Positions 34,025 through 63,973 of a stretch of DNA of 64,000 bases are shown piece by piece. The stretch comes from Lepidodermella squamata (lineage: Eukaryota; Animalia; Gastrotricha). The notes beneath the pieces are model-generated. The model was not told the origin of the DNA and did no database searches. It saw only the letters and a program-made list of their open reading frames with translations. Every line of letters begins with the position of its first letter. Within the stretch, counting starts at the first letter, position 1. Location of the stretch: the NCBI GenBank assembly GCA_047495785.1, contig JBLDXI010000013.1, forward strand, positions 3,720,001 to 3,784,000, written 5' to 3'. The position numbers were made by a program, and so were the translations under genes.

Positions 34025-37000
34025 TTAAATGTCTGCGATAACCGACTTATCATCTTCATCAAAAACTTCTTCTTCTTCCTCATCTTCTTCTTTCAGATTT
34101 TCGACCGCTACAGACAAAGCGTGGCGATTACTATCAGCGGATTTCCGAGATGAGACATCTGAGGGACGAGTCCCCACGTTAGCAGCCTTTGGGAGGAAGA
34201 GCCTGTTGTGCGCTGCATCAGGATCTTCTGAACTAGTTGCGCTTGGAGGATTGACCGGCAAGTCATTTATAGATGTTAACAAATGACGTCTCCTGTATGG
34301 TGCAATAGATCTTCTCAAGAGATGGGGCGATCTAAGAAATGGACGATAGATATATAAATCAAATTAATTTTGGAGCTTACTTGGGAAGCATTGCACTTTG
34401 AGCATCCGATTGATCGCTAGTGTTTGATCCTTGATTTCGATATCCATTGCCACCAGCTAAATTCTCAGTACTACGTGAAGTAAGCCCCGTCATACTTGAG
34501 CCTGAGAAAATGTCCAAAAGTTCGAATCGAAAGCTTGATATGTCCTGCTTAATTTCTTCCAAGTCGACAGTTCCGCTACTGCCCTGTATGGTAAGGCCCA
34601 TAATGAATCGGCGAACAACTTTGTGAATGACGTCATTGAAACGCGGAGCAGGCGCCGCCATCTCACGCCATATAATTCCACCTACAAGTGAGCTGACAGC
34701 TATGATGCCGTTGTGGGTTTTGTCCGCACCCGGACCATCTTGATTTAAACTACTAGTTACAGTCGAGGGGTTTGCTTTCGCGTCGTTGTCCTCGAGTGAC
34801 TCTGCATCATCGCTCATAAATGGCGTAGCTGCAGCTGATCTTGTGTTTGCTTTCTTGAGGCGGCTGAAGCGAAGTTGTTTGAAAAGCCGTTGGAAAGTCA
34901 TAATCAAGTATCTTGGGTTTGGAATGAGATTGAAAGGAGTTGGAACTGTCGGAGAATAATCGGCGATATACTCCAAAAATAATATTGTTCTTGCGTATTT
35001 CCATTCCATTTCTGAGTTGATCTTAAATAATAAAATTTTATAGTTCGCGTAAGTTGACTGAATCTTTAAATCACCTTGATTGCTTCGTAACTGTTCGCCA
35101 TCATAGCTATAAGCATGTTAAGCAGAACACAAACAACCACAACACTGTAGCCACCGTACATAATGTAGCCGATTCTCTCCACCCAGATCATACTTCCATC
35201 GGCGAAGTTTTGAAGATTCATGTAATCCGACTCGCCGAGGCCGAAAAGTGACCAAAAAACCGTGCGGAAGGTGAGCTCAATATCGCCAAACCGTTTCTCG
35301 GCCGGAATGTTGGGTTCATATGAAGAATTAAGCTGAAGAATTTGTCGTAGCGATGGATTGAAATACCAGTAAACATTCATAGTGCCAATCATAAAAGCCG
35401 CGAAGACGACAAGAAATACAAAGAAGAAAGCAAAAATGTCGTTAACAACGCGCATTAACGCGAGGTAACACGGCCCGAAGACCTCAAGTACCGGGAAGAT
35501 GTAAAGAAGTCTGGAAAACGAGAATACAGCACCAACGGCAAAAAGTAGCTCGCTACATGTTAAGGGGTCTACGGGATGAAAGTAAAAACGATCCGAATTG
35601 ATCCAATATAGCTTGTTGGGGAAAAGTAATAAGGAGGCGTTTGAAACTGGCTGCTCTGCGAAAAATGTCACAGCATCGATTGTCTGAAAGCAAACTTGAG
35701 ATGACAAACTTTGAGGCAGACGGAATGAATTTCTTACCTTGCCATAAGACATGAAACGGTAGAATAATGCCGCTGCAAAAACGGCCAACATAACGTAGTC
35801 GATAAAATCAAAGGGAGAGCGGCACACTGTTGCCCATCTTTGGTTCAACCGATTAGGAATGTCCCGAGTGATGATATCGAAAAGCTTCCGGAAGAGCAGC
35901 CCTAACAGCCAGATGCTTACAGCCCACGACATCCAGTTATCACCACGCGGTCGAATGATGAAGTCCTTACCAAAGCTACACATTTCTGCCACGCCTCTTG
36001 CGGAAAGCTCACCAACTGAATCTACAGCCTGCTCCCCAGAGCTTTTAAAAGACGCTGGATTGCTGCAAGGACCGCAAAACGCCTTACAGTACTGGTAAAC
36101 AGTTTCGTTAAGGTTGTAAAGCTTCACTGTTCGCGGGTCTGATATCGCCGACGTCAGATTACTGAGCCTCTCAGGTTCGTTGTAGCAGCCAAACGTGTTA
36201 ATTGACAGCATGCACAAAATCCCGATGAAAATCATGTAAGACACCGAATAAGCTACAAATTTAACCAAAGGTCTGGAGATAAGTTGCCCAGGTCTCGAAT
36301 CAGGTACAATCCAATGGAAGAACATTAAAATCGGGTAGCCCAACATAATAAACAACAAATTGAGGAAAATTTTGCTGGGTCCGGAAGCACCTTGAAATTG
36401 ATTGAAACCTCGCAACCAACGGCGCATAAGTTCCTGTTGGCAAGACCAATGTGAGACGAATTCTTTCTGTTTGTACTGAATTGCGACTCGCAGACGTGCA
36501 AGGGGTTCAGACTTGACGAAGACGGTTTCAAAATTTGATTCGCTGGACGATTGAGCGGATAGACCATTCCCGAAAAAGGAAGACTCTACCGCTGCATCGA
36601 CTGCTGGTGAGTTGTTGCTACCTGAAGTTCGTTGGCTATTCGAAGTTTTAACACTATAACAATTTAGTATAGTCTTCAGTTCGTAGTGAGTTCTGACGTT
36701 GTCGAGGAGTTTTACGACATAATGACTCAACTGCGCGACGAGCTCTTTGTACTCGCGTTTGAAATGCTTCTCCTGAGCCGCTCTTATCTCCATTTGCCGC
36801 GATAGCTCAAACGCGGTTTGGAAGGGATCTGTTGAAGTAAGGGAGATGTAAGCTTCCGACGTTAAGGCGCGGTACTCATTCAGTCGCCTCTTCGCGTGTC
36901 TCAACAGATCGCGGCTACTATGTGGAATGTCTTTATCCGGGGCACAGCGGTCGCAGTTACAGTCGAAATCGTGTGGCAGTGGGACTCGCATTCCATCTTG

Positions 37001-37755
37001 CCATAGCAGATGAACTATTCCAAAAAGGTTCTTCTGGCAAGCTAAGATGATAGGTGAGATGTCATCAGAGAACGGACTGGTTTCGGGCAACTTCGAAGCA
37101 AGCTCCGGCCATCTGTTGTGGTACTGACGGTAGTTGGGATGCTTCAGAATTAGCTCTGTGATGTTTTCGTAACTGTAGAACAATGAAATTGATAAACATT
37201 AGAACGGAATTTTAAGCTTACTTATGGCTAATCGCGAGAAGCAAGGCTTCGTAAAGGTTCACAGGGTTCGATTTATCGAGCAGCATTTCGACAATCTAAA
37301 AGTTAAGTTTGATTGAGATTGTTGTCGATTATGGGTGTTTTCCTTACCTCTGCATGCTCATTTACAACTGCTATTTGGATAGCGGTTCGGCCAAAAGCGT
37401 CGGCTGCGTCGCAGTCTAAAGCTGGATTCTGGCTAAGAATCGCCTCAACCCCAGGTGCATCCCCATACTCCGCAGCCCAGAAGAGGTTACGTAACTCTTC
37501 ACTCGGCTGGGGCACGAACATTTGCAGGGTCGATTGGCGCCGGCGCATAGTTTTGTCCGGGCCTCGATCAGGGTGCTTTCTAGGCGAACTTCCTTTCTGA
37601 AGGTTAAGAATAAGGATATTCGAGCCGAGATCGAGTCGGAAATGCCTCACCTTGCCATTACTTGCCGTACTGCTATTCGAATACATTTTCCGAAGGGCCT
37701 CAGGCCGGGTAAAGGACGTGATTCTTTTCACAGCCCGCACGGCTCTTACGGACAT
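34025..37755 (-). CDS. TRPC: TRPC-family cation channel, paralog A
   Basis: Ankyrin AAEYGD..GRTAIQIAVVNEH; DISPIILACQKN; PHDFDCNCDRC; YRALTSEAYISLTSTDPF; pore FRTVFWSLFGL; LLNMLIAMMANSY; TRP box EWKYAR; EIKQDISSFRFELL. Confidence 0.92.
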
Positions 37756-48900: not shown

Positions 48901-50053
48901 GCGGTTAAAATCGGCGTCAACTTTTCAATAGCTCGCGTATGGAATGCCAGTTCCAATACGATAGCTTCAGTCAACACTTTCTAATAATTATTCAACAAAA
49001 TTAAAAATTAATGAAATTTTTTAAATTTCAACCTTGAGTTGCTGCAATTTTGTCCGCTCAAAATTAATTAATTCAGACTCGCTTTTATTTTGAGCAGCCA
49101 ATGCGTCAAGGCTGCCAGATTGTTTATTCAAAGATGTTTCCGCTTGTTTCTGAAAAAAAAATATTAGAATACTTAATATAATCGATATTTTAGATTTGAA
49201 ATCCCTACCGTAGTTAATTTTGATTCGCTGCCAGAAAAACTTCGCCGCAGACTTTTCGCATCTTTACAGTCGTTTGAAAGCTTGAGGAAAAGTGGAATGA
49301 CGCTGCTCTCGATTTGGCCCAATTTAGCCTGGCGGTAGTCCTGAGTAGACACAAGGTACTTGGCCATAGATTCCATCGCGTTTTTCGTCGTAGGGCTGTA
49401 CATGTGCGGCCCACGAGCGAATTCAACGTTGATTTTCGCAACATCGTCAACTGAAATTTAGAATAAATATACAGTGTTGGAACGTTAAAACAATGCATGA
49501 AGCTACATTAGCTATTCAAAATGTGGTTCCTATGCGAAATGTGCTTACTTTAGTACCTATAGAGCTCTTATCAACTTGTTTTTTTACTTGTACATGAGTG
49601 CTGGTATTTAATTACTGATGTGTTCGGCTCAGTAGCTTAGTGGTAGAGCGTCTGCCTAGTAAGCAGAAGATCGAGGGTTCGATCCCCCCCTGAGCCTAAC
49701 CGAAATTATTTTTATTTTTTTATTCTTTTATTTTCGTATAGACCAACTCGGCTCTTTAATTATGTTCAAGTTTATATAATTTTTTTAATTCTTCGATTGT
49801 TAATTCCATCTCTTTCAGCGCATAATGCAAATGTTTGCATATTCACTTGATTTTTTTCATTATGAATATAAGGCTTACAGGCATCTCGAAGTCCAGCTTC
49901 TTTCCTGGCTATCGTTGAAAAAGCCCCAGTCATCGATTCCAAATATTTCTCAAAATTCGACAATGCATGCTGGGCATTGCTGAAAAATTCGAAAAAATAT
50001 TTAAAAAAACTACAAAATAAGGAATTAACTTACGCGGGAGGTTGAAGAGGCAT
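45912..50053 (-). CDS. FAM92: FAM92/CIBAR BAR-domain protein (about 6 exons; acidic and Pro/Gly-rich last exon 45912-46199)
   Basis: NFEKYL..IARKEAGLRD, QDYRQAKLGQIE, FERTKLQQLK, ELAFHTRAIE..INIEADLAEY match FAM92 hallmarks; the last intron 46200-48611 joins in phase 0. Confidence 0.8.
46628..48510 (+). pseudogene. Decayed gene or transposon remnant nested antisense in the FAM92 intron
   Basis: Higher-GC coding-like tract with broken ORFs (46639, 46883, 47430, 48190) in an unusually long 2.4 kb intron; family not recognised. Confidence 0.35.
49626..49697 (+). tRNA. tRNA-Thr (anticodon AGT)
   Basis: Acceptor stem GGCTCAG/CTGAGCC, D arm GCTTAGTGGTAGAGC, anticodon arm TCTGC-CTAGTAA-GCAGA, T loop TTCGATC, downstream T-runs. 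Confidence 0.93.
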
Positions 50054-50137: not shown

Positions 50138-51886
50138 TTAGCACATCGCAATATTAGCCAGCTGTTGAGTTGCAATAATTGAATTCAATTTAACATAAAT
50201 CTCCAACAAACAGTACGCATCAGCCGCCGCGTACAGCAGCTGGCCCTCGTCTAACGGCCGCCGGTTCCAGTTCGACATGCGGTACATTTTCGGCACCCGC
50301 TGCCCCAGCGCCCATTCAGCAACGTAGGCAAGCGATCGCGGCGGTTTATCACCGGCCAGCGGTGAATTTTTCTCGCGCAACGCCTGCCAAACACGAGTTG
50401 AAAACACCTCCAACTCGACGACATTTTTCGGCTCGAAGCACGCAAATTCAGCCGGGAAAGACTTGGCAAACATTTGAAGATCATACTTGAAGCCATGAGC
50501 AATTTTTTGAACACCCTCAGATTTCAGCACCCGACGAAACAACTCCCAGTCGCTCTTCGCAAATTTCAACTCGAGCGACTCTAGATCGATGATAAAAACT
50601 CGATCGATCAAGGCGATTTGAAGAATAGCCATTTTCGGCTCGCGATCCGGCGGCGTGACGCCCGTCCACTCCGCATCAATGCCAATCGACCGCATCAAAG
50701 GATCGCCTAAACTGCCAACAGACAGTATGTAGTGCATAGCGGTTTGAAATTCTCGCACAGAGTCGATAAAGGCGATGGTTTGCCTCGGCAACGGGAAGCG
50801 GTATAACGTTAAATTATCATTATCAGGCTGAACCTCACCCTGCATCATCACATTTTTCGCATCTCTTGGAATTGAAAATAAACGATGTAGAGACAACTGG
50901 TCGACAAAATGCGCCGCCTCAGCGTTCAACCCGCATTTGAGCAAACTTGAAATAGCATATGGAGCAAAACGCTGGTCAATATTAGCGAAGGTTGATATCA
51001 AATCTCGAAAAGTCCTAACATCCATTTCAGCCTCAGGACCGAAAGTCGATCGAATCAGGAAACTGACCTTCTTTTTCATGTCAAACAGTGACATATTCGG
51101 GTATTTCCGAATCGAAGCTAGGTCATTCAAGTCACGCGGCAGCTTTGAAACGGTCAGATCGAAAAAATCACCCGCAATACGAATATTCGTTCCAGTTGGG
51201 CCTAGTTCCGAGGCTAAACGGCCTGAATCAATCAACGAATCGAGATACGACAAAATTTTATGCCGTTTTTCGGCAGAAACTGCGAGGAGAATTTTCTTTA
51301 GCGTCGCGCTTTTGTTCATGCAAACGAGATAAATCGCCAATTTACCGAACATTTCGTCATTCAAAATCGACTCGACAGGTAGTATTTCGCAATGAATGTC
51401 GAGAATCGAAGACAACTCGCGAAAATTCCGGGCATCCGCGAATTTTTTAGCCGCTTCGGCGAAAATTTCGCGGACTTTGTCATTCTGGCGACTCGAGAAA
51501 CGGAATAAAGCATTGGCGAGGGAAAAATTTCGGGACGAATTGGCTAATGATAATGCGGCGGCTTGAGACTCAATTTCAGGCGCGATGAATTTCGCAAAAT
51601 TTTCATTCCACGAAGTTTGATTGCGAAAATCGTCGACAACTCGCTGTTGCTGCCATGCGAGAAAGCTGTCCCAAATGCAGTTGTACAGCGTATCCTTCGG
51701 ATTTTGGGCAGATTCTGCATTTTCGAGGAACGAATTGGCAAGATCGAGAAAGTCCTTGAACGGATTTTCACTGCGATTGAAAAATGCGATTATTGCATCG
51801 CTGCAGGCATTCCGAGAATCAACGGCTTGTTTTGCCCATAAATCGCGAAGAATAACCACCACACTTTCGACATTATTAGCTGCCAT
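50138..51886 (-). CDS. EXD3: EXD3/MUT-7/Nibbler-like DEDDy 3'-5' exonuclease, paralog 5 in transcription order (NTD + EXO)
   Basis: Intronless 582 aa; IGIDAEW, GFKYDL, SNWNRRPLDEGQLLYAAADAYCL. Confidence 0.88.
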   Translation of the reverse strand: MAANNVESVVVILRDLWAKQAVDSRNACSDAIIAFFNRSENPFKDFLDLANSFLENAESAQNPKDTLYNCIWDSFLAWQQQRVVDDFRNQTSWNENFAKFIAPEIESQAAALSLANSSRNFSLANALFRFSSRQNDKVREIFAEAAKKFADARNFRELSSILDIHCEILPVESILNDEMFGKLAIYLVCMNKSATLKKILLAVSAEKRHKILSYLDSLIDSGRLASELGPTGTNIRIAGDFFDLTVSKLPRDLNDLASIRKYPNMSLFDMKKKVSFLIRSTFGPEAEMDVRTFRDLISTFANIDQRFAPYAISSLLKCGLNAEAAHFVDQLSLHRLFSIPRDAKNVMMQGEVQPDNDNLTLYRFPLPRQTIAFIDSVREFQTAMHYILSVGSLGDPLMRSIGIDAEWTGVTPPDREPKMAILQIALIDRVFIIDLESLELKFAKSDWELFRRVLKSEGVQKIAHGFKYDLQMFAKSFPAEFACFEPKNVVELEVFSTRVWQALREKNSPLAGDKPPRSLAYVAEWALGQRVPKMYRMSNWNRRPLDEGQLLYAAADAYCLLEIYVKLNSIIATQQLANIAMC

Positions 51887-52054
51887 GATATTTAATAATT
51901 TTACCTATTCAGTTAAGAATAGCAGTAGTATAATATTTGATTTATTGTAGAATGAAAGAACAAGACGTGGGGAAGAATTTCTTCATCACTGGATAGCAAA
52001 AAACTTGAAATGAAAAAATTCATTTTGAAAGCATCAACAAATAATGCTGATAAT

Positions 52055-53731
52055 TCAGGGTAAGGAAAACCGCTCAGCTCTCGCAGCTTTTTTGCGCTCA
52101 TTTTCAGGCGTGGAAGTTCGCGATTTAGAAGCGGTCGGCGGTTCAAAATTCGGGAATTCGCCCAATCTCAACAGCATGTTCGCAGCAGCCCTTGACTTAG
52201 CGTCAGCTTTATTTTTCCCGATGCCTCTAGTCACCATCGAAATTTCACCCGAGATCGAACATTTCGCAGTGAAAAGCATCTCACATTGAGGGCGCGATGG
52301 ATCGTTGCGAATATCGAAATCTAGCGTGATTGATTTCTTTTTCGCCAAAACATGCAAAATGTCACTCGGATTTTTCGACCATATTTCAGCGGCAAATTTC
52401 GTAGAATCAATCGAAGCATTCAAGCAATTGGCGATATATTTCGCCTGATCTTTCATCGAAGCGATAGGCACACCAATGAATTCGACTTTTTCGGGTTTTT
52501 GACTTGACGATTGGGCGGAGAAATGGTGTTGAATAGTCACGACAGTTCTTTTATGGCTCCGAGCTTTTTCGCCCAAAACCGAAATTCCAACGTCATTTTC
52601 TTCGAAATCGACATTGAAACCCAAATGCCGCAAATAACCGCCGAGATCGAGGAGGTAAGGGTCGAATAACAGACTGAATTCGGCAGGATTTTTCAAATTT
52701 TTCTCGATATTCAACGTGGAAGAACACGATGACTGATCGTCAATAAACGACTCGGAATTAGGTATCAACAAATTTCGAGAACGAATAACATCGCAAATCA
52801 CGTCGTAAATTTCCAGCAAGCAATAAGCGTCATTTGCTGCGTATATCAGCTGGCCACGAGATAGCGGACGCCGGCACCAATTCGACATTCGATACATTTT
52901 CGAGAGAGGCTTTCCGAGAAAAGTTCTCGCAACTTCAGCCAGATTTTTCGGCGGGCCGACGTTGGTAGAAGCATCTAGAGTGACCCCATTTTTCAAGGTA
53001 ATAGGACCACAGCCTCGAACTCGAAGGGCGTCCCAAACGCGAGGAACAAGAACCTCAATATCAACAACGCTTTCCAGCGCTAATTTACTGCAATACTGGG
53101 GGAAAGTTCGACCTAAAGTCACTACGTCAGAATTGAAACCGAACGCGATTTTTCTCACGTCTTTCGATGCGAAAAATTGTTGAAGGAACGCCCAGTCACC
53201 CTTGGCCAATTTACGCGACAAATTTTCGATATCAACAATAAAAACTGAATTTTCAATGCCGAGTTGAATTATCGACGTCGCGCTGACTGAGTTTGGCAGA
53301 AAATTCGGCAGCCATTCCGAGTCGATTCCGACACATTTATTCTTCGGCAACGCCAGGATATTTTCGAAAATTTCTCGAAATTTCGGCGGAGAATCGATGA
53401 ATTGTATCGAGGATTCAGGTATCGGTAAAGTGTAGAATAACGGCGACGGTTGACTAGGAAAATGCGGCGCTTTTTTACCTGGGCCTGGGGTGTGAGCCAG
53501 GGTGCGTAGAAAATGGTGCAGCTTGTACTTGTTCGCCATGAAACGCGCTTCTTCGTAATAATGCTTCTTGATAAGAGTTGAAACTAAGAAATGAGGATAA
53601 CGTGAGTCAATATCTTCAAAACGATCGACCATATCACGAAACGTCGCAATGTCCATTTCAGCTTTTTCCCCGAAAACCAATTTCAACATGTAAAAAGTTG
53701 AGCCTTGAAGCTGCGAATAAGTCGCCGTCAT
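52055..53731 (-). CDS. EXD3: EXD3/MUT-7-like exonuclease, paralog 4 (short NTD + EXO + partial Mut7-C + dsRBD)
   Basis: 558 aa; VGIDSEW, GFNSDV, SNWCRRPL..YAANDAY; LLFDPYLLDLGGYLRHLGFNV; GIGKNKADAKSRAAANMLLRL. Confidence 0.88.
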   Translation of the reverse strand: MTATYSQLQGSTFYMLKLVFGEKAEMDIATFRDMVDRFEDIDSRYPHFLVSTLIKKHYYEEARFMANKYKLHHFLRTLAHTPGPGKKAPHFPSQPSPLFYTLPIPESSIQFIDSPPKFREIFENILALPKNKCVGIDSEWLPNFLPNSVSATSIIQLGIENSVFIVDIENLSRKLAKGDWAFLQQFFASKDVRKIAFGFNSDVVTLGRTFPQYCSKLALESVVDIEVLVPRVWDALRVRGCGPITLKNGVTLDASTNVGPPKNLAEVARTFLGKPLSKMYRMSNWCRRPLSRGQLIYAANDAYCLLEIYDVICDVIRSRNLLIPNSESFIDDQSSCSSTLNIEKNLKNPAEFSLLFDPYLLDLGGYLRHLGFNVDFEENDVGISVLGEKARSHKRTVVTIQHHFSAQSSSQKPEKVEFIGVPIASMKDQAKYIANCLNASIDSTKFAAEIWSKNPSDILHVLAKKKSITLDFDIRNDPSRPQCEMLFTAKCSISGEISMVTRGIGKNKADAKSRAAANMLLRLGEFPNFEPPTASKSRTSTPENERKKAARAERFSLP

Positions 53732-53831
53732 TATTGTAAAAAAAAATTCAAACTAATTTCAACAAAAAATGCAATGGGTAATTAATTTAATCAATGGCAC
53801 AGAAAAAAAAAACAAGTTAAAATATAATTTT

Positions 53832-55796
53832 TTAAGGCGATTCAGCCTCTGTCAAGCTAACATTTGAAAGATCGAGCTCAGACGAAGAGGAAGAAACATC
53901 GGCAATATTATTATTGCAAAATAGAGCCAATTCCAAGTTTTGAGACGCGATAACATAATTTATCTGAGCGTAAATTTCAAGAAGACTTGTAACATCACAG
54001 GCCGCATACAAAAGCTGGCCTTGGTCGAGCGGGCGGCGATTCCAGTTCGACATTCGGTACATTTTCGAAATTCGCCGGCCGAGAAATTTTTGCGAGACAT
54101 CAACAAGGCTTTTCGGCGCTGTTTCACTCAACGAAACGTCAAGAATCGAATTCGAACCAGGCAGTGAAATTGGGCCGCAATTTTTCTCGCGAAGATTTAG
54201 CCAAAGTTGATCGACTACGCCACCGATATCGACAGTATTCGAAAATTTCAGATCGCGAAATGCATCAGGGTAGCTACGTTGCAACATGCTGATGTCAGAA
54301 TTGAAGCCAAAGGCAACTTTCGTGACATCGGAAGACGAGAAGAAATCACGCATTAATTGCCAGTCACATTTGCTCAACAATTTTTTCAGGGAAATTAAAT
54401 CGAGAATGAAGACGCGATCTGAAGTTCCGAGCTGTAAAATCGAGGGAATTTGTTGTTGCCCGGGAGCAACAACTCCGGTCCATTCAGCATCTAACCCAAC
54501 TAAACCGTTACTTTCCAGCAATAGGCTCATTATTTCACGATATTTTTCAGCAGTGTCCACCATCAAAATAGAGGTCAAAGGCAGCGGAAATTCATAAATA
54601 GGCAACGAAAAATTCGTTTTTGACGGACTTTTCAACTTTTTCTCAGGCGATGACGCCTGTTGTTGTTGTTTCACGGGTGAAAAGGACGAGAAAACGGGAG
54701 AATAAACCAGTTCAGTGAAACCGAAACACTCGGCCCAATAACGAGCTTCGTCTAAATGGCCGAATTTCATCAGTGTCTTGACAATTTTCTGCGAAAAACG
54801 GTTATCAATTCGCGAAAATTCGTCGATTACCTCGCGAAACGTGGCTAAATCCATTTCTGCCTCGCTGCCGAACGTCGATTTAATAATATATGCTGATTTC
54901 TTTTCAAGTTCCATATAAATTATATTACGACAAAATCGACGAGGCGGGCGGATGTTTCGCCACAGTTCAACAGCATTCGACTCAAAAGTCGTTAGAGACA
55001 CATGGAAATTTCGCCCCTCCTCCAATTCAGCCCGAATAGCAGGGAAACGGTCATTCAACGGCGTTCCGATGAAAGAATCAACATAAGCGACTACTTCGAA
55101 AATTCGACTCGAGGGGCGGACGTGTTTTAACATTTTCGAAGCTACGCCAGCTCGATTTTTACAAGCCATGAACAAAACTTGTTTTCGCAACAAATCATCG
55201 TTAAAATCTGCTACAGCCTGCCATAATTTAGGCCCAAGACTTTCTAACATAGCCAACAAAGCGTGGTAATTTTTGCTATTCGCATGGCTCCGCAACTCTT
55301 TGACAAAAAATTCCAAGACTTCTTGGCGGTCATGATCAGGGAATCGAAAGAGCAAACACGCGGTGCCGAAGCTACGATTGTTATGCTTAACAGCTAAATA
55401 AGCGGCTCGCTTCAGAATTTCGACATTAATTAGGCCGCTGAATTGTTCCCACCACTCGTTATCGAATTTAATGTTGTCTTTTCGGTGAATTTTACCACGG
55501 GGTAGACGCGTTTGCTGCCAAGCTATGAAGCGGTGCCAAAAACGAAGATGCAAACTGTCGGAATTTGCGATATTTTCCGGTTCGGCAGGTAAACTTTCCA
55601 TTAGCTCCAAGAATGAAATGAAAGGATTTTCAGCCGCGGCGAAAAAGCTCCAAATCGCCATGGTCACCATATCTCGATTTTTGTTGTCGGTTTTGCGGTC
55701 AAGCCATGTCTTTTGAGCCCATTCGCTGAAAATCGCCACATTTTTCACGTCGATCCCAGGGTCCAACACTGTAACTTGAGGCGTATTTTCTTCCAT
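53832..55796 (-). CDS. EXD3: EXD3/MUT-7-like exonuclease, paralog 3 (NTD + EXO)
   Basis: 654 aa; VGLDAEW, GFNSDI, SNWNRRPL..YAACDV. Confidence 0.88.
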   Translation of the reverse strand: MEENTPQVTVLDPGIDVKNVAIFSEWAQKTWLDRKTDNKNRDMVTMAIWSFFAAAENPFISFLELMESLPAEPENIANSDSLHLRFWHRFIAWQQTRLPRGKIHRKDNIKFDNEWWEQFSGLINVEILKRAAYLAVKHNNRSFGTACLLFRFPDHDRQEVLEFFVKELRSHANSKNYHALLAMLESLGPKLWQAVADFNDDLLRKQVLFMACKNRAGVASKMLKHVRPSSRIFEVVAYVDSFIGTPLNDRFPAIRAELEEGRNFHVSLTTFESNAVELWRNIRPPRRFCRNIIYMELEKKSAYIIKSTFGSEAEMDLATFREVIDEFSRIDNRFSQKIVKTLMKFGHLDEARYWAECFGFTELVYSPVFSSFSPVKQQQQASSPEKKLKSPSKTNFSLPIYEFPLPLTSILMVDTAEKYREIMSLLLESNGLVGLDAEWTGVVAPGQQQIPSILQLGTSDRVFILDLISLKKLLSKCDWQLMRDFFSSSDVTKVAFGFNSDISMLQRSYPDAFRDLKFSNTVDIGGVVDQLWLNLREKNCGPISLPGSNSILDVSLSETAPKSLVDVSQKFLGRRISKMYRMSNWNRRPLDQGQLLYAACDVTSLLEIYAQINYVIASQNLELALFCNNNIADVSSSSSELDLSNVSLTEAESP

Positions 55797-55864
55797 TTTT
55801 AATGTCTATAAAAATGAATAAAGCGATGAAATTTATTAAAATATAATTCAGCAAAATAAAATGT

Positions 55865-57679
55865 TCATAATTCGCACTCGGAAGATGAAGAAACATCTGT
55901 CTGAGCAGGCTCCAACAAATCCAACTTGATATTCAACGATTCAATAACAAATTTAATTTCATCGAAAATGTCCAACAAACAAACAGCGTCTATTGCCCCG
56001 TATATAATCTGAGCTCGATCTAACGGCCGTCGATTCCAGTTAGATTTGCGCACCCGTTTAGAAATGCGCCGGCCCAAAAAACGCTGGGCAAGTTCGGTCA
56101 AACTACCGGGAGCATTGCAAGCGGCAACATCGAGAATAACACCGGAATTTTTCAGCTTTACTTGGCCAGAATTAGCGAGGCGTAAATTTGTCCACAGTCG
56201 AGGCGCCACAATTTTCAAATCAACGGTATTCAACAGTTCAAAATTTCGAAAGTGATCGGGAAAAGAGGTTTTCAGCATAGTTGCATCGGATTTGAAGTCG
56301 AAGGTGACTTTTTGCACTTTTTCGGAAGAGAACATGTCTAGCAGAAGTTGCCAGTCATTTGGCTCCAGTTTATCGCTCAGAGTTACGAAATCGACTAAAT
56401 AAGCTCGATCTCGAAGACCGAGCTGCAAAATCGAAACAAGCTGCTTCTGGCCGGGTAGAGGTATACACGGCCACTCTGAATCAATCCCAACTACAGAGGC
56501 TGAATTGAGAATATAGAGTAGAGCTTCACGAAATTCAGTCACGTTCGATAGCAGATGAATTGAATTTTCAGGCAAAGGATACTCGTAAACTGGCAGTGTA
56601 TAATCAGCCTTTGAAGGGCTTAAAATACGCTTGGTCTTTTCGTTACAATGTGAATCGCCAACGACCGAATTCAAGCCGAAAATGTTCGCCCAATAATGAG
56701 CTTCTTCGCACATGTTTTCATCACTCAACGATTTGATAAGAAATTCACGGCACCGAGGTTCAATCTCGCAATAGGCGGCAATCAGCTCTCGAAACGTCGC
56801 CAAATCCATCTCGCTGTGCTCTTCAAAGGCCATTCCAATGAGGTAAGTTATTTTCTTGCGGATTTCAGCGAACGCGACATTGGGGCATATTTTCTGAGGT
56901 ATATTCATCAAACGGCACAGTTCGGCCGCGCTCGACTCGAATGAATCCAAGGTGAATTGGTTAGTGGAAAGCTCAGTTTGAATTAAAGCACTTCTCTCGT
57001 GATTATGCATTCCGACAAAAGAGTCCAAATAAGAAAATATAGCAGAAGTTCCCTCTGTTTCTTGGTTAATCATCAACAATTTTTTCGCAATTTTGACCTT
57101 GCCTTTGCAAATCAGCAACAAAACTAGGCAATTTAATGATTTCTTGTCAAGTTCGAGATGCATTTCGGTCAATTTCTCGCTCATCTTCTCCAGGATATTG
57201 GAAACCGCTACGTAATTGTCATGCTTTAGTAGCTCGGATACCTTTCCCGAAATATCACGGAGGCCTTTCTCATCAACATAAGTGGATAACCGGAAAGCAG
57301 CACTTATTACAGAGAAATTAGCCGCGTTGTTCCTCAAAGCAAGATTCAAAGCTCTGTCGACGATCTCGGGTGAGACATAGCGACTGAATCGAATAGACCA
57401 CAAATCAACGCCGTGATGAGTAATTTTATCTCGCTGGATGGTAAATTGCTGCCAGATAATAAACCGAGTCCATATTAAATTTTCTAATTCTTGAACGCAG
57501 CCATGTAGAAAGTGGACAATGTCAATTATCGAGGAAAATGGATTCAGGCTCTTGGAAAATAAATCTTGCAGGAGATTAGCGATCTTTTCTTTGAAGTCGG
57601 GATCTTGCTGCAGCCAAGCTTTCTCGATTAATCCGGCCAACGCTCTCGCATCATCATTAGACTTTTCATTAGAGCTCAT
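55865..57679 (-). CDS. EXD3: EXD3/MUT-7-like exonuclease, paralog 2 (NTD + EXO)
   Basis: 604 aa; VGIDSEW, DFKSDA, SNWNRRPL..YGAIDAV. Confidence 0.88.
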   Translation of the reverse strand: MSSNEKSNDDARALAGLIEKAWLQQDPDFKEKIANLLQDLFSKSLNPFSSIIDIVHFLHGCVQELENLIWTRFIIWQQFTIQRDKITHHGVDLWSIRFSRYVSPEIVDRALNLALRNNAANFSVISAAFRLSTYVDEKGLRDISGKVSELLKHDNYVAVSNILEKMSEKLTEMHLELDKKSLNCLVLLLICKGKVKIAKKLLMINQETEGTSAIFSYLDSFVGMHNHERSALIQTELSTNQFTLDSFESSAAELCRLMNIPQKICPNVAFAEIRKKITYLIGMAFEEHSEMDLATFRELIAAYCEIEPRCREFLIKSLSDENMCEEAHYWANIFGLNSVVGDSHCNEKTKRILSPSKADYTLPVYEYPLPENSIHLLSNVTEFREALLYILNSASVVGIDSEWPCIPLPGQKQLVSILQLGLRDRAYLVDFVTLSDKLEPNDWQLLLDMFSSEKVQKVTFDFKSDATMLKTSFPDHFRNFELLNTVDLKIVAPRLWTNLRLANSGQVKLKNSGVILDVAACNAPGSLTELAQRFLGRRISKRVRKSNWNRRPLDRAQIIYGAIDAVCLLDIFDEIKFVIESLNIKLDLLEPAQTDVSSSSECEL

Positions 57680-57732
57680 TAATTTTTGTTAAAATGATCT
57701 AGCGAAAAAAATAAAAAATAAAAATTAAGAAA

Positions 57733-60117
57733 TTAATACTCATCCTCGAGCTCTTTCTCAGTCAATAACAAAATCATGTTAGTTGCAGCACGATTTTTCG
57801 CATCATGCTTAGAAGCCCCGACGCCTTTAGTTTCTAATAACAATTCACCAGATGAAGTCGAATGCAAGCGGCAAATAGTCTCGAACGGAGGTTCGTCATC
57901 AGAGCGACCAGGCTTGATAACATCTTCGTATGTAGCGTGGCCACGATCAGGCAGGTGAGCAGAAACTTGATGCAGACGCTGAATTGGATTTTTAATAACA
58001 AAATTTTCATCAATCTTTGTAGCATCAACACGAGTGCCGAGCCTGAGAGCGAGGAATTCAATCTGATCTCGGAGTGAACCAGTTGGAACTGAAATCAACT
58101 TGTCCGATTGTTCCTCGTTGATACAGGATGTTATGATTATGCAGTCGTTTAAATTTGCTTTTTCTTCCAAATCAGTGATATCGCATTGTTTTGGTATGAT
58201 TGAAACATCAAATCCAATCCGTCTCAAGCAAAGACCAAGGTCAACCAAGACAGCATCACAAAGAAGGTGGAACTTGGAATAATCAGCTGAAACGTCATCT
58301 TTCACATTATTCGTATTTTCCACATTCAAATTGCAAGCAGAGATGAGAAAAGACATTGAGCGATATATTTCTAACAAGCAATACGCGTCGATCGCAGCGT
58401 AGAGTACTTGGCCTTCATTCAATGGCCGTCGCCTCCAGTTTGATAATCTGTACATTTTGTTTATTCGTTTTCCAATGAAAATTCGTGCGACATCGGATAA
58501 ACTTGACGGGACTTCCGCAGTCTTAACGTTGAACGATAAGTTGTTTTCCAGCTGAATAATCGGATGATTAGCCGCTCTTAATAGTTTCCATAATCTGACA
58601 GTTAGGCTCTCGAAGTCAACCAGGTTAACAATTTGAACGCCATCCATTTGCGGAAACGATTCAAGCAAAGCGGAGACATCGGACTCAAATCCAAACGTCA
58701 ACTTCTTTATTTTAGGAGAAGAAAACAACTCTTTCAGCAAGCTCCAGTCGCTTTCATTAAATTCAGCCGATAATTGATCCATATCGAGAAGAAAAACGCG
58801 ATCAGAGACTGCAAGTTGGAGAATAGATATTTTTGATTTGCTGCCAAGTTGGCACATTGCGGGCCATTCGGAATCAATGCCAATCAGTAAGTCATGCTCG
58901 GTCAGTTTGTCAGCTTCAGATAGAAGGCAATCAAGAGTACGCTGGAAATCTGCTCTCGAGCTCACAACTTTTACACATTGGCGAGGGATCGGCAGCGCGT
59001 AAAATTGAGAACTGGCAATGCTTTCATTCATCTTATTTCTATCGCTGAGGTAGTTTTTGCTGTTATCATGAGTTAAAAGGCAAGTTTCGATATTAGGAGG
59101 CAATTTCTCCATATCCTTCGCAAATTGCAAGAAGTAACGAGCTTCATTGGGAAGACCGTGAGAAGATAGGTAAGAAATAACCCATGATAGAAAACTAAGA
59201 TGATCATTCGCTAAAAGTAAAATGAACTCGTGAAAAGAATCAACGTCCATTTCGGCTTCAACGCCAAATGCTGCGCGTACCATGAACAGAGTCATTTCCT
59301 TTAGGTAAATCAAAACGACGTTGGGGCAGCAGTCAGGTAAAATATTCAAATCGGCTATAATACCGGATAAGATAGTGAACATTGAAGAGTGGGAATAGAC
59401 AAGCTTAGCTGGAGACGCGAGAATGTCAGAAGTGAATGGATCAGAGTCTTCCGAAATTTCAGGAATCACAAGAGCATCTAGCGATGACATGAGGTTAATA
59501 ATTTTCATTGGAGAATTCATAGATTTTAAAATAGCTTTCAGCAAATGTCCCTCCTTTTTGCTTATCAAGAATAGCGACAGATTCTTTAGCTGATCATCGC
59601 TAAGAATGTCACACAGCTGGAATTTATCAGCACCCAAGTGATCAATCATAGCAGCAGCAGCTCGGAAATTGTTCTCGCTGATCAATTGAGACAGTTTTGC
59701 AGAAAATATAAGTGAGATTGGACGATCACGGCAGTGTTCCTTGAACTTGAAAGTGTTAGACGCAGTAGAAAAATACCGCATTTTGTTCTTGAAAGATAAT
59801 TCAACAGCACGCAGCAATTGTTCGCCAGATAGAAGGTCACTCATAACGTTGTTTTGGTTCGTCGAAGCAGATACAGATTCCAGCTTCTTCGTGAATTGAT
59901 GCCAAGCATAATCTGTGACCTTTTCCCAGTATCTTATAGGTTCCGTGGCAAGGTGGTCAATAAGGTTCAAAAACGCCTCGGCTGGATTAGCAGCTTCTTC
60001 AAAGTAACGATCAAGAAAATGTAGAACGGCTTCCTTGCTATTAATTTCGTTTGTCCGCTCTCTCAAAATCAAATCAAGGTTCAACACCAATGCCGTGACA
60101 TCGGAAACACAGGACAT
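57733..60117 (-). CDS. EXD3: EXD3/MUT-7-like exonuclease, paralog 1 (NTD + EXO + partial Mut7-C + dsRBD)
   Basis: 794 aa; IGIDSEW, GFESDV, SNWRRRPL..YAAIDAY; LLCDAVLVDLGLCLRRIGFDV; NPIQRLHQ..PPFETIC..GVGASKHDAKNRAATNMILLL. Confidence 0.9.
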   Translation of the reverse strand: MSCVSDVTALVLNLDLILRERTNEINSKEAVLHFLDRYFEEAANPAEAFLNLIDHLATEPIRYWEKVTDYAWHQFTKKLESVSASTNQNNVMSDLLSGEQLLRAVELSFKNKMRYFSTASNTFKFKEHCRDRPISLIFSAKLSQLISENNFRAAAAMIDHLGADKFQLCDILSDDQLKNLSLFLISKKEGHLLKAILKSMNSPMKIINLMSSLDALVIPEISEDSDPFTSDILASPAKLVYSHSSMFTILSGIIADLNILPDCCPNVVLIYLKEMTLFMVRAAFGVEAEMDVDSFHEFILLLANDHLSFLSWVISYLSSHGLPNEARYFLQFAKDMEKLPPNIETCLLTHDNSKNYLSDRNKMNESIASSQFYALPIPRQCVKVVSSRADFQRTLDCLLSEADKLTEHDLLIGIDSEWPAMCQLGSKSKISILQLAVSDRVFLLDMDQLSAEFNESDWSLLKELFSSPKIKKLTFGFESDVSALLESFPQMDGVQIVNLVDFESLTVRLWKLLRAANHPIIQLENNLSFNVKTAEVPSSLSDVARIFIGKRINKMYRLSNWRRRPLNEGQVLYAAIDAYCLLEIYRSMSFLISACNLNVENTNNVKDDVSADYSKFHLLCDAVLVDLGLCLRRIGFDVSIIPKQCDITDLEEKANLNDCIIITSCINEEQSDKLISVPTGSLRDQIEFLALRLGTRVDATKIDENFVIKNPIQRLHQVSAHLPDRGHATYEDVIKPGRSDDEPPFETICRLHSTSSGELLLETKGVGASKHDAKNRAATNMILLLTEKELEDEY

Positions 60118-61508: not shown

Positions 61509-63973
61509 ATGAAATCGGAAACAAAAATGAAGACTGTTTCGAGTAGGCGAAATTCTCGCAAACAAGTCGTGTCTGAAGTCGACGAGCAACAGGAAAATAT
61601 AAAATCATTTGACGAAAACCTTTCTGATGTTTCGTTGGAATCATGCAAGAGCGAAGATGACGACTGGGTCGACCGCGAAGAAAAGCAGGTTAGCTCTGCG
61701 GATAGCGGAGCTGTCTTATCCAAGAAATCTCCAGTAAAGCGATACGTGAAACAATCTCCTCGGAAAGATGAATATGAATACGATTCTTCGGATGAAGAGG
61801 TAGGTATTATTAGTCCCAATGACCCAAACACAATTTATTAATGCTCATTTGCTATCCAGGACATCCGAAATACCGTAGGAAACATTCCTCTTCAATGGTA
61901 TAAAACTTACGACCACATCGGTTACGACTGGTCCGGAAAGCGTATCCTCAAACCGAAATCGGCCGATGGAAGTTCGCTTAGCCGCGATCTTATCGATATT
62001 TTCATTTCCCGCATGGACGACCCGAACTTTTCACGAACTGTCATTGATCCCCAGACAGGTCAGGAAGTTACGCTATCCGATAAGGATCTCGAGCTCGTGC
62101 GAAATATTCAGCGAGGGAACTATCCAGATCTTAGTCACGACCCCTATGAGCCCTGGGTTGATTTGTATTCGCACGAAGTTGAGCAATTTCCAGCTGTCGA
62201 TGTTCCACCTAGCAAGCGTAGTTTCTTGCCATCTTTGGCGGACCGTGTCAAAATTGGCCGAATGGTTCATTCTATTAAAATGGGTTGGATGAAACCCCGA
62301 GGCGCCAAGCCGTTGTTTGCAACTGATCAGCAAGAGAAGTACTATTTGATGTGGCGTGACGGCGAGGAACCGGAAACCAACAAACACTACAAAACTCGCA
62401 TTCCAGCTCCGAAATTGCCGTTACCGCCCACGACTGAGTCTTACAACCCACCTGCTGAACACTTGTGGACACCTGAGGAGAAGGCGAAGTGGGAGAAAAC
62501 CGACCCAGAAGATCGTCGTCAAAATTACGTGCCTCAAAAATATAACTCGCTACGTCAAGTGCCGGCCTTCTCTCAGTTTATCCAAGAGCGCTTCCAACGC
62601 TGTCTTGATCTGTATTTGTGCCCACGTGCTACGAAAAATAAGACTCCAATTGATAATCCTGAGGATTTGTTGCCGAAATTGCCTCGACCCCGTGACCTGG
62701 AACCTTTCCCGAAAACAGTCAGTGTTACCTACACAGGTCACACGTCACTTGTTCGATCTGTCTCGCTCGATTACAGCGGTCAGTGGTTGGTATCTGGATC
62801 AGATGATGGCACAGTTCGTTTCTGGGAAGTTTCAACTGGACGTTGTATGCGAACTGTCACGTTAGCAAGCGGCAGTCCTGTTAAACAAGTGGCATACAAC
62901 CCGAATCCTCAACTTACCTTAGTTGCTGCTGTCGTGTAAGTTTTTAATCATAATCATTCATCTGATCGAAATTTTGGACTTTGCCTTTCCTGGTTAAGCG
63001 CAGGAAATGCCATCAAAAATGAGATAACTCCCACTGTTTTTTGTTGTTGTGCTTAAATCTTATCTCATCGGATGCTTTGCTGATTACTAATTATTCTAAG
63101 TGCGTGTCTGTTTATTCGTATAGCGGTAACGAGTTGGTGCTAATCAACGCGGGATTAGGAGATAAGGTGCTAGTCGAGGCGACCGCCTCGCTGTTTTCTG
63201 ATATCTCTCCATCGAAACCAGTTGTAGTCGAGGGAAACAACGCAAATGTAAAATGGAGCGTCCCTAAATCGTCGGCGAGTAGCGGCGGGGCTATTCTCAT
63301 GCGAATCGAGCACCAAAAAGAGATCGGACGTGTCGATTGGCATGCTAAGGGCGACTATTTCGTCGTAGCTATGCCCCAAGGCCTAAGTCAGTCGGTCTAC
63401 GTTCATCAAATGTCGAAACGGCGAACGCAGAACCCGTTCAAAAAGGCGAAGGGCATTGTTGGAAGTGCTTTATTCCACCCGACTAGGCCGCAACTGTTTG
63501 TGGTCACCCAGCAATCGATCCGGATCTATGATTTGTTGAAACAGCAGCTGTTGCGTAAATTAACTGCGAATTGCAAATGGATTTCTTCGGCCGAAATTCA
63601 CCCGAGTTCTGGCGATCACGTTTTAATTGGCAGCTACGATTGCCGGTTGAACTGGTTCGATTTGAACTTATCACCCAGGCCGTATCGAATGATTCGACCT
63701 CACCAATCTGCTGTTCGGCGTGTAACTTTCCACAAAAGGTACCCACTTTTTGCGTCGTGCTCTGACGACGGGTCGATTTTGGTCAGTCATGCGACTGTGG
63801 ATGATGATTTGCTCACAAATGCGACGATTGTTCCTTTACGAGTGCTGCGAAATGGTCACGATGTTGCGTCGGATAAGCATAATGGCTTAGGTGTGCTGGA
63901 TTGCGTCTTCCACCCCACACAACCGTGGTTGATTTCGAGCGGAGCTGACGGCAAAATTTGCCTGTGGACTTGA
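61509..63973 (+). CDS. BOP1: Ribosome biogenesis protein BOP1/Erb1 (exons about 61509-61799, 61860-62935, 63124-63973)
   Basis: DSSDEE|DIRNTVGNIP, ESYNPPAE, ERFQRCLDLYLCPR, PKLPRPRDLEPFP, WD40 repeats, FHPTQPWLISSGADG. Confidence 0.97.

What the first reader, a model, noticed from the sequence alone, without database searches (positions are those of the whole stretch)
57733..58280. MUT-7 exonuclease fused to a dsRNA-binding domain that replaces the Mut7-C zinc ribbon
Seen: after EXO comes the N-terminal half of Mut7-C (LLCDAVLVDLGLCLRRIGFDV..IIITS..DQIEFL). The expected CxxC zinc-ribbon half is absent. A dsRBD-like segment follows instead (NPIQRLHQ..YE..PPFETICRL..GVGASKHDAKNRAATNMILLL, about 57760-57990). 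The same fusion is conserved in the paralog at 52055-53731 (NPSDILH..FTAKCSI..GIGKNKADAKSRAAANMLLRL). I know of no EXD3 with a dsRBD. Inference: a duplex- or hairpin-targeted 3'-5' exonuclease acting on pre-miRNA, siRNA duplexes or viral dsRNA.
Basis: partly seen in the sequence, partly recalled or inferred. Interest (0 to 1): 0.88.

Follow-up and report, generated by a model that had tools for sequence, protein, structure and literature searches.

The report
MUT-7 exonuclease carrying a dsRNA-binding domain
Two of five tandem MUT-7/EXD3-type RNA exonuclease genes in this unidentified animal-like genome have swapped the family's usual zinc-finger tail for a standard double-stranded-RNA-binding domain, an arrangement I did not find described for this small-RNA-processing family.

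Summary

**Architecture.** The 794-aa ORF (57733-60117, minus strand) reads:
- MUT-7-type N-terminal domain;
- intact DEDDy 3'-5' exonuclease;
- the N-terminal half of MUT7-C (CTD-N);
- a canonical alpha-beta-beta-beta-alpha dsRBD.

The paralog at 52055-53731 (558 aa) has the same tail.

**Evidence for the dsRBD.**
- Pfam dsrm scores 27.5 and 36.1 bits on the isolated domains (cut-off 23).
- A four-sequence profile hits Loquacious, R2D2, Staufen, PKR and TRBP in the PDB, down to E 7.6e-11.
- The AlphaFold2 model aligns to solved dsRBDs at Z 8.7-11.6, about 2 A rmsd over about 70 residues.

**Zinc ribbon.** None of the four tails has a CxxC pair. Canonical MUT-7 homologues have two.

**Conservation.** A syntenic array on a metagenome contig (about 30-40% identity) keeps the fusion in both orthologues. 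The fusion therefore predates that species split. The dsRBD is about as conserved as the catalytic domain (38% against 39%).

**Novelty.** I found no other exonuclease with this tail in 1.84 billion representative proteins, and no mention in the two domain surveys I read. Three green-algal clusters combine this exonuclease domain with dsrm in a minority (14% where listed) of members.

**Not shown.** dsRNA binding is inferred:
- the region-3 lysines are largely kept;
- the loop-2 histidine is lost;
- the 794-aa copy's dsRBD is not basic.

Expression could not be checked. I rate it a new variant of a known kind, of moderate interest.

The parts
57733..60117 (-). 794-aa ORF: MUT-7/EXD3-like protein, NTD - EXO - CTD-N - dsRBD (the finding's gene).
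   Evidence: Single uninterrupted ORF. Pfam exo, Mut7-C N-half and dsrm. Atlas nearest clusters are 'MUT7 exonuclease'.
58909..60117 (-). N-terminal MUT-7-type domain (about aa 1-403).
   Evidence: Aligns with the N-terminal regions of the Adineta, Athalia and Trichogramma MUT-7 homologues. No Pfam model covers it.
58354..58908 (-). DEDDy 3'-5' exonuclease domain (aa 404-588).
   Evidence: PF01612 71.3 bits. D415, E417, D480, Y573 and D577 are invariant in all 13 aligned sequences.
58003..58278 (-). CTD-N, the N-terminal half of MUT7-C (aa 614-705), without the following zinc ribbon.
   Evidence: Pfam Mut7-C profile 3-82/146, 15.8 bits. hhalign to canonical Mut7-C: 78.6%, E 1.7e-5, CTD-N columns only. 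Fold hits to Mut7-C proteins, human EXD3 617-851 and MUT-7 CTD 8q66. No CxxC.
57742..58002 (-). dsRBD (aa 706-792; fold matches cover aa 709-789).
   Evidence: Pfam dsrm 27.5 bits on the isolated domain. AF2 a1-b1-b2-b3-a2 with block pLDDT about 85-90, except the b1-b2 loop. VIA-align Z up to 11.6 to solved dsRBDs.
52055..53731 (-). 558-aa paralog: short NTD - EXO (aa 119-312) - CTD-N - dsRBD - short basic tail.
   Evidence: Pfam exo 61.9 bits, Mut7-C N-half 13.5 bits, dsrm 31.1 bits. It lacks about 265 N-terminal residues present in the other paralogs.
52142..52384 (-). dsRBD of the 558-aa paralog (about aa 450-530).
   Evidence: Pfam dsrm 36.1 bits, E 1e-8. phmmer hits to Staufen-type and other multi-dsRBD proteins in 1.84 billion representatives. 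pI 9.6.
52385..52684 (-). CTD-N of the 558-aa paralog (about aa 350-449).
   Evidence: Pfam Mut7-C profile 3-60. Aligned with the 794-aa copy's CTD-N at 34% identity.
50138..57679 (-). Three further array members (604, 654 and 582 aa) with NTD + EXO only, plus the 558-aa gene between them.
   Evidence: Pfam exo only. They form one clade, support 81/88, consistent with a single loss of the C-terminal domains.

Best explanation
These are lineage-specific members of the MUT-7/EXD3/Nibbler family of 3'-5' exoribonucleases. The variable zinc-finger half (CTD-C) of the MUT7-C domain has been replaced by a canonical dsRBD acquired by domain shuffling.

Shown: the domain order NTD - DEDDy EXO - CTD-N - dsRBD, the loss of all four zinc-ligand cysteines, an intact catalytic pentad, and conservation of the fusion in two paralog lineages and two divergent species.

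Inferred: in MUT-7 and EXD3 the CTD acts as one arm of an RNA-binding 'forceps' that raises ssRNA affinity 6-8 fold (PMC11347159). Here that arm would be re-specified. The dsRBD docks on an A-form duplex while the EXO domain works on the adjacent single-stranded 3' end. The enzyme would then trim 3' overhangs or tails of hairpin or duplex RNAs, such as small-RNA precursors, Dicer products or structured RNAs.

The 558-aa form has a truncated NTD and a basic dsRBD, so it probably depends most on the dsRBD for substrate capture.
For: - Architecture: Pfam; profile-profile; PDB profile search; AF2 topology; fold searches.
- PDB profile hits: Loquacious E 7.6e-11, then R2D2, Staufen, PKR and TRBP. 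In the fold searches the N-terminal part matches Mut7-C/EXD3 and the C-terminal part matches dsRBDs.
- No CxxC in any tail. DEDDy invariant.
- Conservation: a syntenic metagenome locus next to BOP1 holds 750-633-512-627 aa genes. Its 750-aa and 512-aa genes keep the tail. w794 and L750 form a clade at 98/99. dsRBD identity is 38%, EXO 39%, linker 16%.
- RNA-binding competence, region 3: the KKxAK motif reads SKHDAK, NKADAK and TKQEAK in three of four copies.
- RNA-binding competence, dsRBD type: the family profile scores Loquacious dsRBD1 (22-23 bits) and dsRBD2 (14 bits) far above dsRBD3 (4.9 bits). From general knowledge, dsRBD1 and dsRBD2 bind RNA and dsRBD3 binds Dicer.
- RNA-binding competence, charge: the short paralogs' dsRBDs are basic, pI 9.6 and 9.7.
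- Literature: the CTD is an RNA-binding, structurally plastic module (PMC11347159).
Against: - One run guessed to be RNA holds 47% of the gene's sampled words.
- The loop-2 GPxH histidine, a standard minor-groove contact, is absent in all four copies.
- The dsRBD of the 794-aa copy has pI 6.6 and its CTD-N is acidic, pI 4.6.
- The top structural matches include the protein-binding dsRBD3 of Loquacious and TRBP and Staufen dsRBD5, though only about 1 Z unit above RNA-binding dsRBDs.
- The two metagenome orthologues are not recognised by Pfam dsrm on their own.
- The organism and its small-RNA pathways are unknown.
Confidence: 0.6

Rival explanations
1. The dsRBD is a 'type B' protein-interaction, dimerisation or localisation module, like Loquacious/TRBP dsRBD3 or Staufen dsRBD5. 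It would recruit the exonuclease to a partner such as Dicer, an Argonaute complex or a granule scaffold. This would be functionally analogous to the C. elegans CTD-C insertion that binds MUT-8, and it would not bind dsRNA.
For: - Top VIA-align matches are Loquacious dsRBD3 (Z 11.6), TRBP dsRBD3 (11.4, 11.0) and Staufen dsRBD5 (10.5).
- The loop-2 histidine is lost in all four copies.
- The dsRBD is neutral in the 794-aa and 750-aa lineage, pI 6.6 and 7.8.
- Precedent: animal CTD-C insertions are used for partner binding (PMC11347159).
Against: - At sequence level the profile matches the RNA-binding dsRBD1 and dsRBD2 of Loquacious, and Staufen, PKR and TRBP dsRBDs, far better than Loquacious dsRBD3 at 4.9 bits.
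- Two of the three region-3 lysines are kept in three of four copies. Typical type-B dsRBDs lack them.
- The Z differences are about 1 unit and not discriminating.
Confidence: 0.27
2. The dsRBD-like segment is not homologous to dsRBDs. It would be a diverged MUT7-C CTD-C, or an insertion that lost its zinc ligands and merely converged on a small alpha/beta fold.
For: - Animal CTD-C insertions are highly variable and can form beta-sheets (PMC11347159).
- Some Foldseek alignments to whole Mut7-C domains span the whole model, at rmsd 13-19 A.
Against: - Significant sequence matches to canonical dsRBDs: Pfam above the cut-off for both window copies, phmmer hits to Staufen-type proteins in a 1.84-billion library, PDB profile E 7.6e-11, hhalign E 1.2e-9.
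- hhalign to canonical Mut7-C stops at the end of CTD-N.
- Atlas Mut7-C hits align only about 92-100 residues, the size of CTD-N.
Confidence: 0.03
3. Gene-model artefact or decaying gene. The dsRBD would belong to a separate downstream gene, or the ORFs would be unexpressed pseudogenes of a recent tandem amplification.
For: - Expression could not be checked.
- The window's proteins are not on record in the public protein or gene collections searched.
Against: - Frames of 794 and 558 codons are uninterrupted.
- The same contiguous fusion occurs in two orthologous ORFs of a species only about 30-40% identical. That requires long-term purifying selection.
- Catalytic residues are invariant.
- A run guessed to be RNA holds 47% of the gene's sampled words.
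Confidence: 0.04

Closest known systems
MUT-7 / EXD3 / Nibbler family (C. elegans MUT-7, PDB 8Q66 CTD; human EXD3 Q8N9H8; Drosophila Nibbler)
   Same: N-terminal MUT-7-type domain and DEDDy RNase D-type EXO domain with all five catalytic residues. The CTD-N half of MUT7-C sits directly after EXO. Tandem-array members without a CTD resemble Nibbler's NTD+EXO layout.
   Different: The CTD-C zinc finger (two CxxC pairs with a lineage-specific insertion) is entirely absent and a dsRBD sits in its place. The family has expanded to five tandem intronless paralogs. One dsRBD-bearing paralog has lost most of the NTD.
Canonical dsRBD proteins (Loquacious, R2D2, TRBP, PACT, Staufen, PKR; Pfam PF00035)
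   Same: alpha-beta-beta-beta-alpha fold, about 2 A rmsd over about 70 residues. Shared G-x-G-x-S-K-x-x-A-K-x-x-A-A signature at the start of helix 2.
   Different: A single dsRBD fused to an exonuclease rather than tandem dsRBDs. The loop-2 GPxH motif is lost. The 794-aa copy is not basic.
RNase III / Drosha / Dicer (nuclease followed by a C-terminal dsRBD)
   Same: General logic of a catalytic RNA nuclease followed by one C-terminal dsRBD. RNase III dsRBDs are among the best fold hits.
   Different: The catalytic domain here is a DEDDy 3'-5' exonuclease, not an RNase III endonuclease. There is no homology outside the dsRBD.
ERI-1 / 3'hExo (SAP domain + DEDDh exonuclease) - comparison from general knowledge, not tested here
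   Same: A 3'-5' exonuclease in which an accessory nucleic-acid-binding domain holds a stem or duplex while the 3' overhang is trimmed. This is the mechanism I propose here.
   Different: Different exonuclease subfamily (DEDDh) and a different accessory domain (SAP), placed N-terminally.
Green-algal 3'-5' exonuclease clusters in which a minority of members carry dsrm (ESM Atlas, about 378 aa, Chlorophyta)
   Same: The Pfam pair PF01612 + PF00035 occurs in one protein in three clusters; the listed one has dsrm in 14% of members.
   Different: Short proteins. Mut7-C is not among the listed cluster's common families, they are not animal, and feature similarity is low (0.77-0.79, 120 shared features). 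I could not retrieve their sequences to compare.

Membership tests
MUT-7/EXD3/Nibbler exoribonucleases | RNase D-type DEDDy 3'-5' exonuclease domain with intact D-E-D-Y-D residues | tested here: met
   PF01612 scores 62-74 bits in all five window paralogs. D415, E417, D480, Y573 and D577 are invariant across 13 sequences.
MUT-7/EXD3/Nibbler exoribonucleases | MUT-7-type N-terminal helical domain upstream of EXO | tested here: inconclusive
   It aligns with the N-terminal regions of the Adineta, Athalia and Trichogramma homologues at low identity. Atlas nearest clusters are MUT7 exonucleases at 0.84-0.86. No fold model of the NTD was made. The 558-aa paralog lacks about 265 residues of it.
MUT-7/EXD3/Nibbler exoribonucleases | MUT7-C CTD-N subdomain directly after EXO | tested here: met
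   Pfam Mut7-C N-terminal profile positions score 13.5-15.8 bits, sub-threshold, in three proteins. hhalign gives 78.6%, E 1.7e-5. Fold hits: Mut7-C proteins over model residues 6-107, human EXD3 CTD, 8q66.
MUT7-C domain (PF01927 / IPR002782) | C-terminal zinc ribbon with four conserved cysteines (two CxxC pairs) | tested here: not met
   There are no CxxC motifs in the four tails and two in each of three canonical homologues. The Pfam match stops at profile position 82 of 146.
dsRBD (Pfam dsrm PF00035) | Sequence match above the curated threshold | tested here: met
   Isolated domains score 27.5 and 36.1 bits against a cut-off of 23. In full-length context the scores are 21.8 (just below) and 31.1. 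The two metagenome orthologues are not detected by Pfam alone.
dsRBD (Pfam dsrm PF00035) | alpha1-beta1-beta2-beta3-alpha2 fold | tested here: met
   AF2 gives a1 117-126, b1 132-140, b2 151-159, b3 165-173 and a2 176-197. The top 50 VIA-align entries are all dsRBDs, Z 8.7-11.6.
dsRBD, RNA-binding (type A) | Region 3 KKxAK lysines at the N-terminus of helix 2 | tested here: inconclusive
   The first and last lysines are kept in w794, w558 and L750. The middle one is H, A or Q. L512 keeps only the first.
dsRBD, RNA-binding (type A) | Region 2 GPxH loop histidine | tested here: not met
   The aligned position is D, C/Q, Y or G/D in the four copies.
dsRBD, RNA-binding (type A) | Measured binding to A-form dsRNA | not testable with these tools
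   Needs EMSA or FP with purified protein.

The most novel reading that the evidence does not exclude
An under-sampled animal lineage has rebuilt MUT-7 into a small family of specialised exonucleases. Two are anchored on double-stranded RNA by a dsRBD: one has a full NTD, one is NTD-less with a basic dsRBD. Three are Nibbler-like and lack a CTD. Together they would define a duplex-directed 3'-trimming or dsRNA-degrading step in small-RNA biogenesis or antiviral defence that has no counterpart in model organisms.
Probability: 0.25. Interest if true: 0.72.

Novelty: new variant of a known kind. Interest (0 to 1): 0.55.

Why it matters
MUT-7/EXD3/Nibbler enzymes shape siRNA, miRNA and piRNA 3' ends. 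The role of their C-terminal domain was only recently assigned: RNA binding plus lineage-specific partner binding (PMC11347159).

A natural variant that replaces the zinc-finger half with a well-understood dsRNA-binding module is an evolutionary experiment. It supports the view that CTD-C is an exchangeable substrate- or partner-selection module. It also predicts a substrate switch from single-stranded RNA to duplex-flanked 3' ends.

The prediction is directly testable with recombinant protein. If confirmed, the result would add a new way of coupling dsRNA recognition to exonucleolytic trimming in animals.

Tried and rejected
- The search for homologous proteins, all three searches. The C-terminal region of the 794-aa protein found nothing. 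The whole 558-aa protein gave 5 hits. A 13-sequence profile gave 5 hits and nothing new except an RNase D/HRDC protein. No architecture survey was possible with this tool.
- The search for related loci in JGI metagenome contigs. Two alignments were too divergent to seed a search. The single protein and a 6-sequence alignment found no relatives.
- The look-up of encoding contigs for the window's own 794-aa and 558-aa proteins: not on record.
There is therefore no read-level evidence. The 794-aa protein was referenced from 57742 upward. All fold and profile searches used the trimmed alignment A2 and the model m7f67a372a7d9.
- Organism identity: not obtained. Run names are coded, and the only close relative is an unnamed metagenome contig.
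- Literature searches for a MUT-7, EXD3 or Nibbler protein with a dsRBD found none.
- Rejected readings: a chance dsRBD-like motif (multiple significant scores), a divergent CTD-C (hhalign to Mut7-C ends at CTD-N), and a read-through of two genes (the same fusion occurs in four ORFs of two species).
Full report
**What is in the sequence**

The minus strand of 50138-60117 carries five closely spaced long ORFs, each uninterrupted. The gaps between them are about 50-170 bp.

| ORF (minus strand) | Length |
|---|---|
| 57733-60117 | 794 aa |
| 55865-57679 | 604 aa |
| 53832-55796 | 654 aa |
| 52055-53731 | 558 aa |
| 50138-51886 | 582 aa |

Pfam finds the RNase D-type 3'-5' exonuclease domain (PF01612, 62-74 bits) in all five. 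Only the 794-aa and 558-aa proteins have further matches:
- a weak Mut7-C match confined to the N-terminal part of the profile (positions 3-82 and 3-60 of 146; 15.8 and 13.5 bits);
- dsrm (21.8 and 31.1 bits against a cut-off of 23).

Scanned as isolated domains, the two dsRBD segments score 27.5 bits (E 4.8e-6, full profile 2-66) and 36.1 bits (E 1e-8). Both are above the curated threshold.

In a 13-sequence alignment with rotifer and hymenopteran MUT-7 homologues, the DEDDy residues D415, E417, D480, Y573 and D577 (794-aa numbering) are invariant in every array member.

**Is the tail a real dsRBD?**

Four independent lines agree.
- *Library search.* I ran phmmer with the last 219 residues of the 558-aa paralog against 1.84 billion representative proteins. 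It returned 25 hits at E below 1e-3.
  - 23 are Staufen-type or other multi-dsRBD proteins, with Pfam dsrm scores of about 80-170 bits, matched over the dsRBD part of the query.
  - One is a repeat protein, which I read as spurious.
  - One is the orthologue described below.
- *PDB profile search.* A profile of the four family tails (alignment A2) hits Loquacious (E 7.6e-11 and 3e-9), R2D2, Staufen, PKR, TRBP and PACT. All hits fall at profile positions about 115-194.
- *Profile-profile comparison.* hhalign against an alignment of nine canonical dsRBDs gives 96.4% probability, E 1.2e-9.
- *Structure.* Two AlphaFold2 runs gave pLDDT 77.9 and 72.3 and pTM 0.74 and 0.72. The second used a sequence trimmed by two residues.
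  - Both give helix 117-126, strands 132-140, 151-159 and 165-173, and helix 176-197. Ten-residue blocks average about 85-90 pLDDT there, except the b1-b2 loop.
  - VIA-align on the trimmed model lists only dsRBDs among its top 50 PDB entries: Z 8.7-11.6, about 2 A rmsd over about 70 residues, model range 112/115-195.
  - Foldseek against PDB, Swiss-Prot AFDB and the ESM Atlas agrees.

**Is the preceding segment half of MUT7-C, and is the zinc ribbon gone?**

- hhalign of A2 against three canonical MUT7-C domains aligns only the CTD-N columns: 27-123 against 9-105, 78.6% probability, E 1.7e-5. The alignment stops where the canonical proteins begin their first CxxC.
- Fold searches match model residues about 6-108 to stand-alone Mut7-C proteins, to 'exonuclease mut-7' proteins, to human EXD3 residues 617-851 (rank 6 in Swiss-Prot AFDB) and to the MUT-7 CTD crystal structure 8q66.
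- None of the four tails contains a CxxC motif. Each canonical homologue has two.
- Busetto et al. 2024 (PMC11347159) describe MUT7-C as a conserved CTD-N plus a variable CTD-C. Its zinc finger carries lineage-specific insertions. They show that the CTD raises ssRNA affinity 6-8 fold in MUT-7 and EXD3.

In those terms, this protein keeps CTD-N and replaces CTD-C with a dsRBD.

**Conservation in a second species**

The best database relative (P0001, 38% identity) lies on a 53-kb metagenome contig, held here as L001 and L002. Beside BOP1 this contig carries a tandem array of 750-, 633-, 512- and 627-aa exonuclease genes. BOP1 is also the upstream neighbour of the 794-aa gene in the window.

The 750-aa and 512-aa proteins align over the whole CTD-N + dsRBD tail, including the G-x-G-x-x-K-x-x-A signature and the following helix. 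Pfam alone does not detect their dsRBDs.

In a maximum-likelihood tree:
- w794 pairs with L750 (support 98/99);
- w582 pairs with L627 (99/99);
- the CTD-less paralogs form one clade (81/88).

Both the fusion and the duplication therefore predate the split of two species that are now only 30-40% identical. The CTD-less genes are best read as one secondary loss.

Between the w794 and L750 orthologues the dsRBD is 38% identical. The catalytic domain is 39%, CTD-N is 25-28% depending on the alignment, and the linker is 16%. That pattern indicates selection on the dsRBD.

**How unusual is it?**

- Apart from the orthologue, no exonuclease-bearing protein matched this tail in the 1.84-billion library.
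- Among the 100 nearest ESM Atlas clusters, animal MUT-7 clusters carry exo alone or exo + Mut7-C.
- Three Chlorophyta clusters combine exo with dsrm. The listed one is about 378 aa, with dsrm in 14% of members and low feature similarity to the query.
- Exo + dsrm is therefore not absolutely unique, but I did not find it in animal MUT-7/EXD3.
- The 2017 PIN-superfamily classification lists only three Mut7-C architectures: exo + Mut7-C, stand-alone or ubiquitin-like fusions, and an oomycete tRNA-edit fusion (PMC5499597).
- The 2024 MUT-7 study never mentions a dsRBD (one search shows zero occurrences of 'dsRBD'; one search shows zero of 'double-stranded').
- My database surveys were weak, so 'rare' is better supported than 'unique'.

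**Mechanism**

*Shown:* an intact DEDDy exonuclease is covalently linked, through CTD-N, to a dsRBD fold.

*Inferred:* the dsRBD replaces the CTD-C arm of the RNA-binding forceps. It would hold an A-form duplex while the exonuclease acts on the adjoining single-stranded 3' end. The enzyme would then trim overhangs or tails of hairpins or duplexes. From general knowledge, this resembles how ERI-1/3'hExo uses its SAP domain.

For RNA binding:
- Two of the three region-3 lysines are retained in three of four copies.
- The family profile prefers Loquacious dsRBD1 and dsRBD2 (22-23 and 14 bits) over dsRBD3 (4.9 bits). From general knowledge, the first two bind RNA and the third binds Dicer.
- The dsRBDs of the short paralogs are basic, pI 9.6 and 9.7.

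Against RNA binding:
- The loop-2 histidine is lost in all four copies.
- The dsRBD of the 794-aa copy has pI 6.6.
- Type-B dsRBDs top the structural list by about one Z unit.

I put about 0.6 on the dsRNA-anchored exonuclease reading and about 0.27 on a partner-binding or localisation dsRBD. The partner-binding reading would parallel the MUT-8-binding insertion of C. elegans.

**Limits**

Transcription and transcript structure are unverified.
- A run guessed to be RNA holds 47% of the gene's sampled words.
All later searches used the ORF from 57742 upward, that is alignment A2 and the second model.
- The organism was not identified.
  - The gene content looks metazoan: a TRP-channel-like ORF with the TRP_2 domain, BOP1, a Zc3h12a-type NYN RNase, and RING/B-box/NHL genes on the related contig.
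  - The genome appears poorly sampled. The window's proteins are absent from the collections searched, and the nearest named MUT-7 homologue is a bdelloid rotifer protein at 30% identity.

**Verdict**

The structural interpretation is supported. The functional interpretation is plausible but untested. This is a new architectural variant of the MUT-7/EXD3 family and is moderately interesting.

Noticed in passing
window 52055-53731 (-) and L001:12092-13630 (+): The 558-aa paralog and its 512-aa orthologue lack about 265-290 N-terminal residues of the MUT-7 NTD. Only about 100 bp separate the gene from the upstream one, so no missing exon is likely. These two copies also have the most basic dsRBDs (pI 9.6 and 9.7).
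   Followed up: partly
window 62013-63973 (+); L001:4707-6665 (-): BOP1 (BOP1NT + WD40) is read as two adjacent ORFs of 308 and 310 aa. It is the conserved divergent neighbour of the exonuclease array in both the window and the metagenome contig, which supports orthology of the loci.
   Followed up: partly
ESM Atlas clusters; AFDB cluster hit A0A059LJ82: Three Chlorophyta clusters (the listed one about 378 aa) combine PF01612 with dsrm, in 14% of members of the listed cluster. [quoted passage not shown] It is unclear whether algae have an analogous exo + CTD-N + dsRBD layout. I could not retrieve the sequences.
   Followed up: no
window 49626-49697 (+): A tRNA gene (Rfam RF00005, 67.7 bits) lies just downstream of the array.
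   Followed up: no
window 28849-29853 (-), 35066-37183 (-), 21444-23615 (+): Other long ORFs in the window: a Zc3h12a-type NYN RNase (102.9 bits), a TRP-channel-like ORF (TRP_2 + Ion_trans) and an ankyrin-repeat protein. Several ORFs of 200-260 aa have no Pfam match.
   Followed up: no
The tool calls it a filter that also trips by chance. They cover the last two codons and the stop of the 794-aa ORF plus most of the 53-bp spacer to the next gene. I did not analyse them further.
   Followed up: no
L001:9306-9935 (+) (tail of the 750-aa orthologue): This copy has lost the first conserved acidic residue of CTD-N (LH-S-S in place of L-x-D). Its dsRBD has five cysteines, including a CCC run. It is the most divergent member, with a branch length of 1.63.
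   Followed up: no
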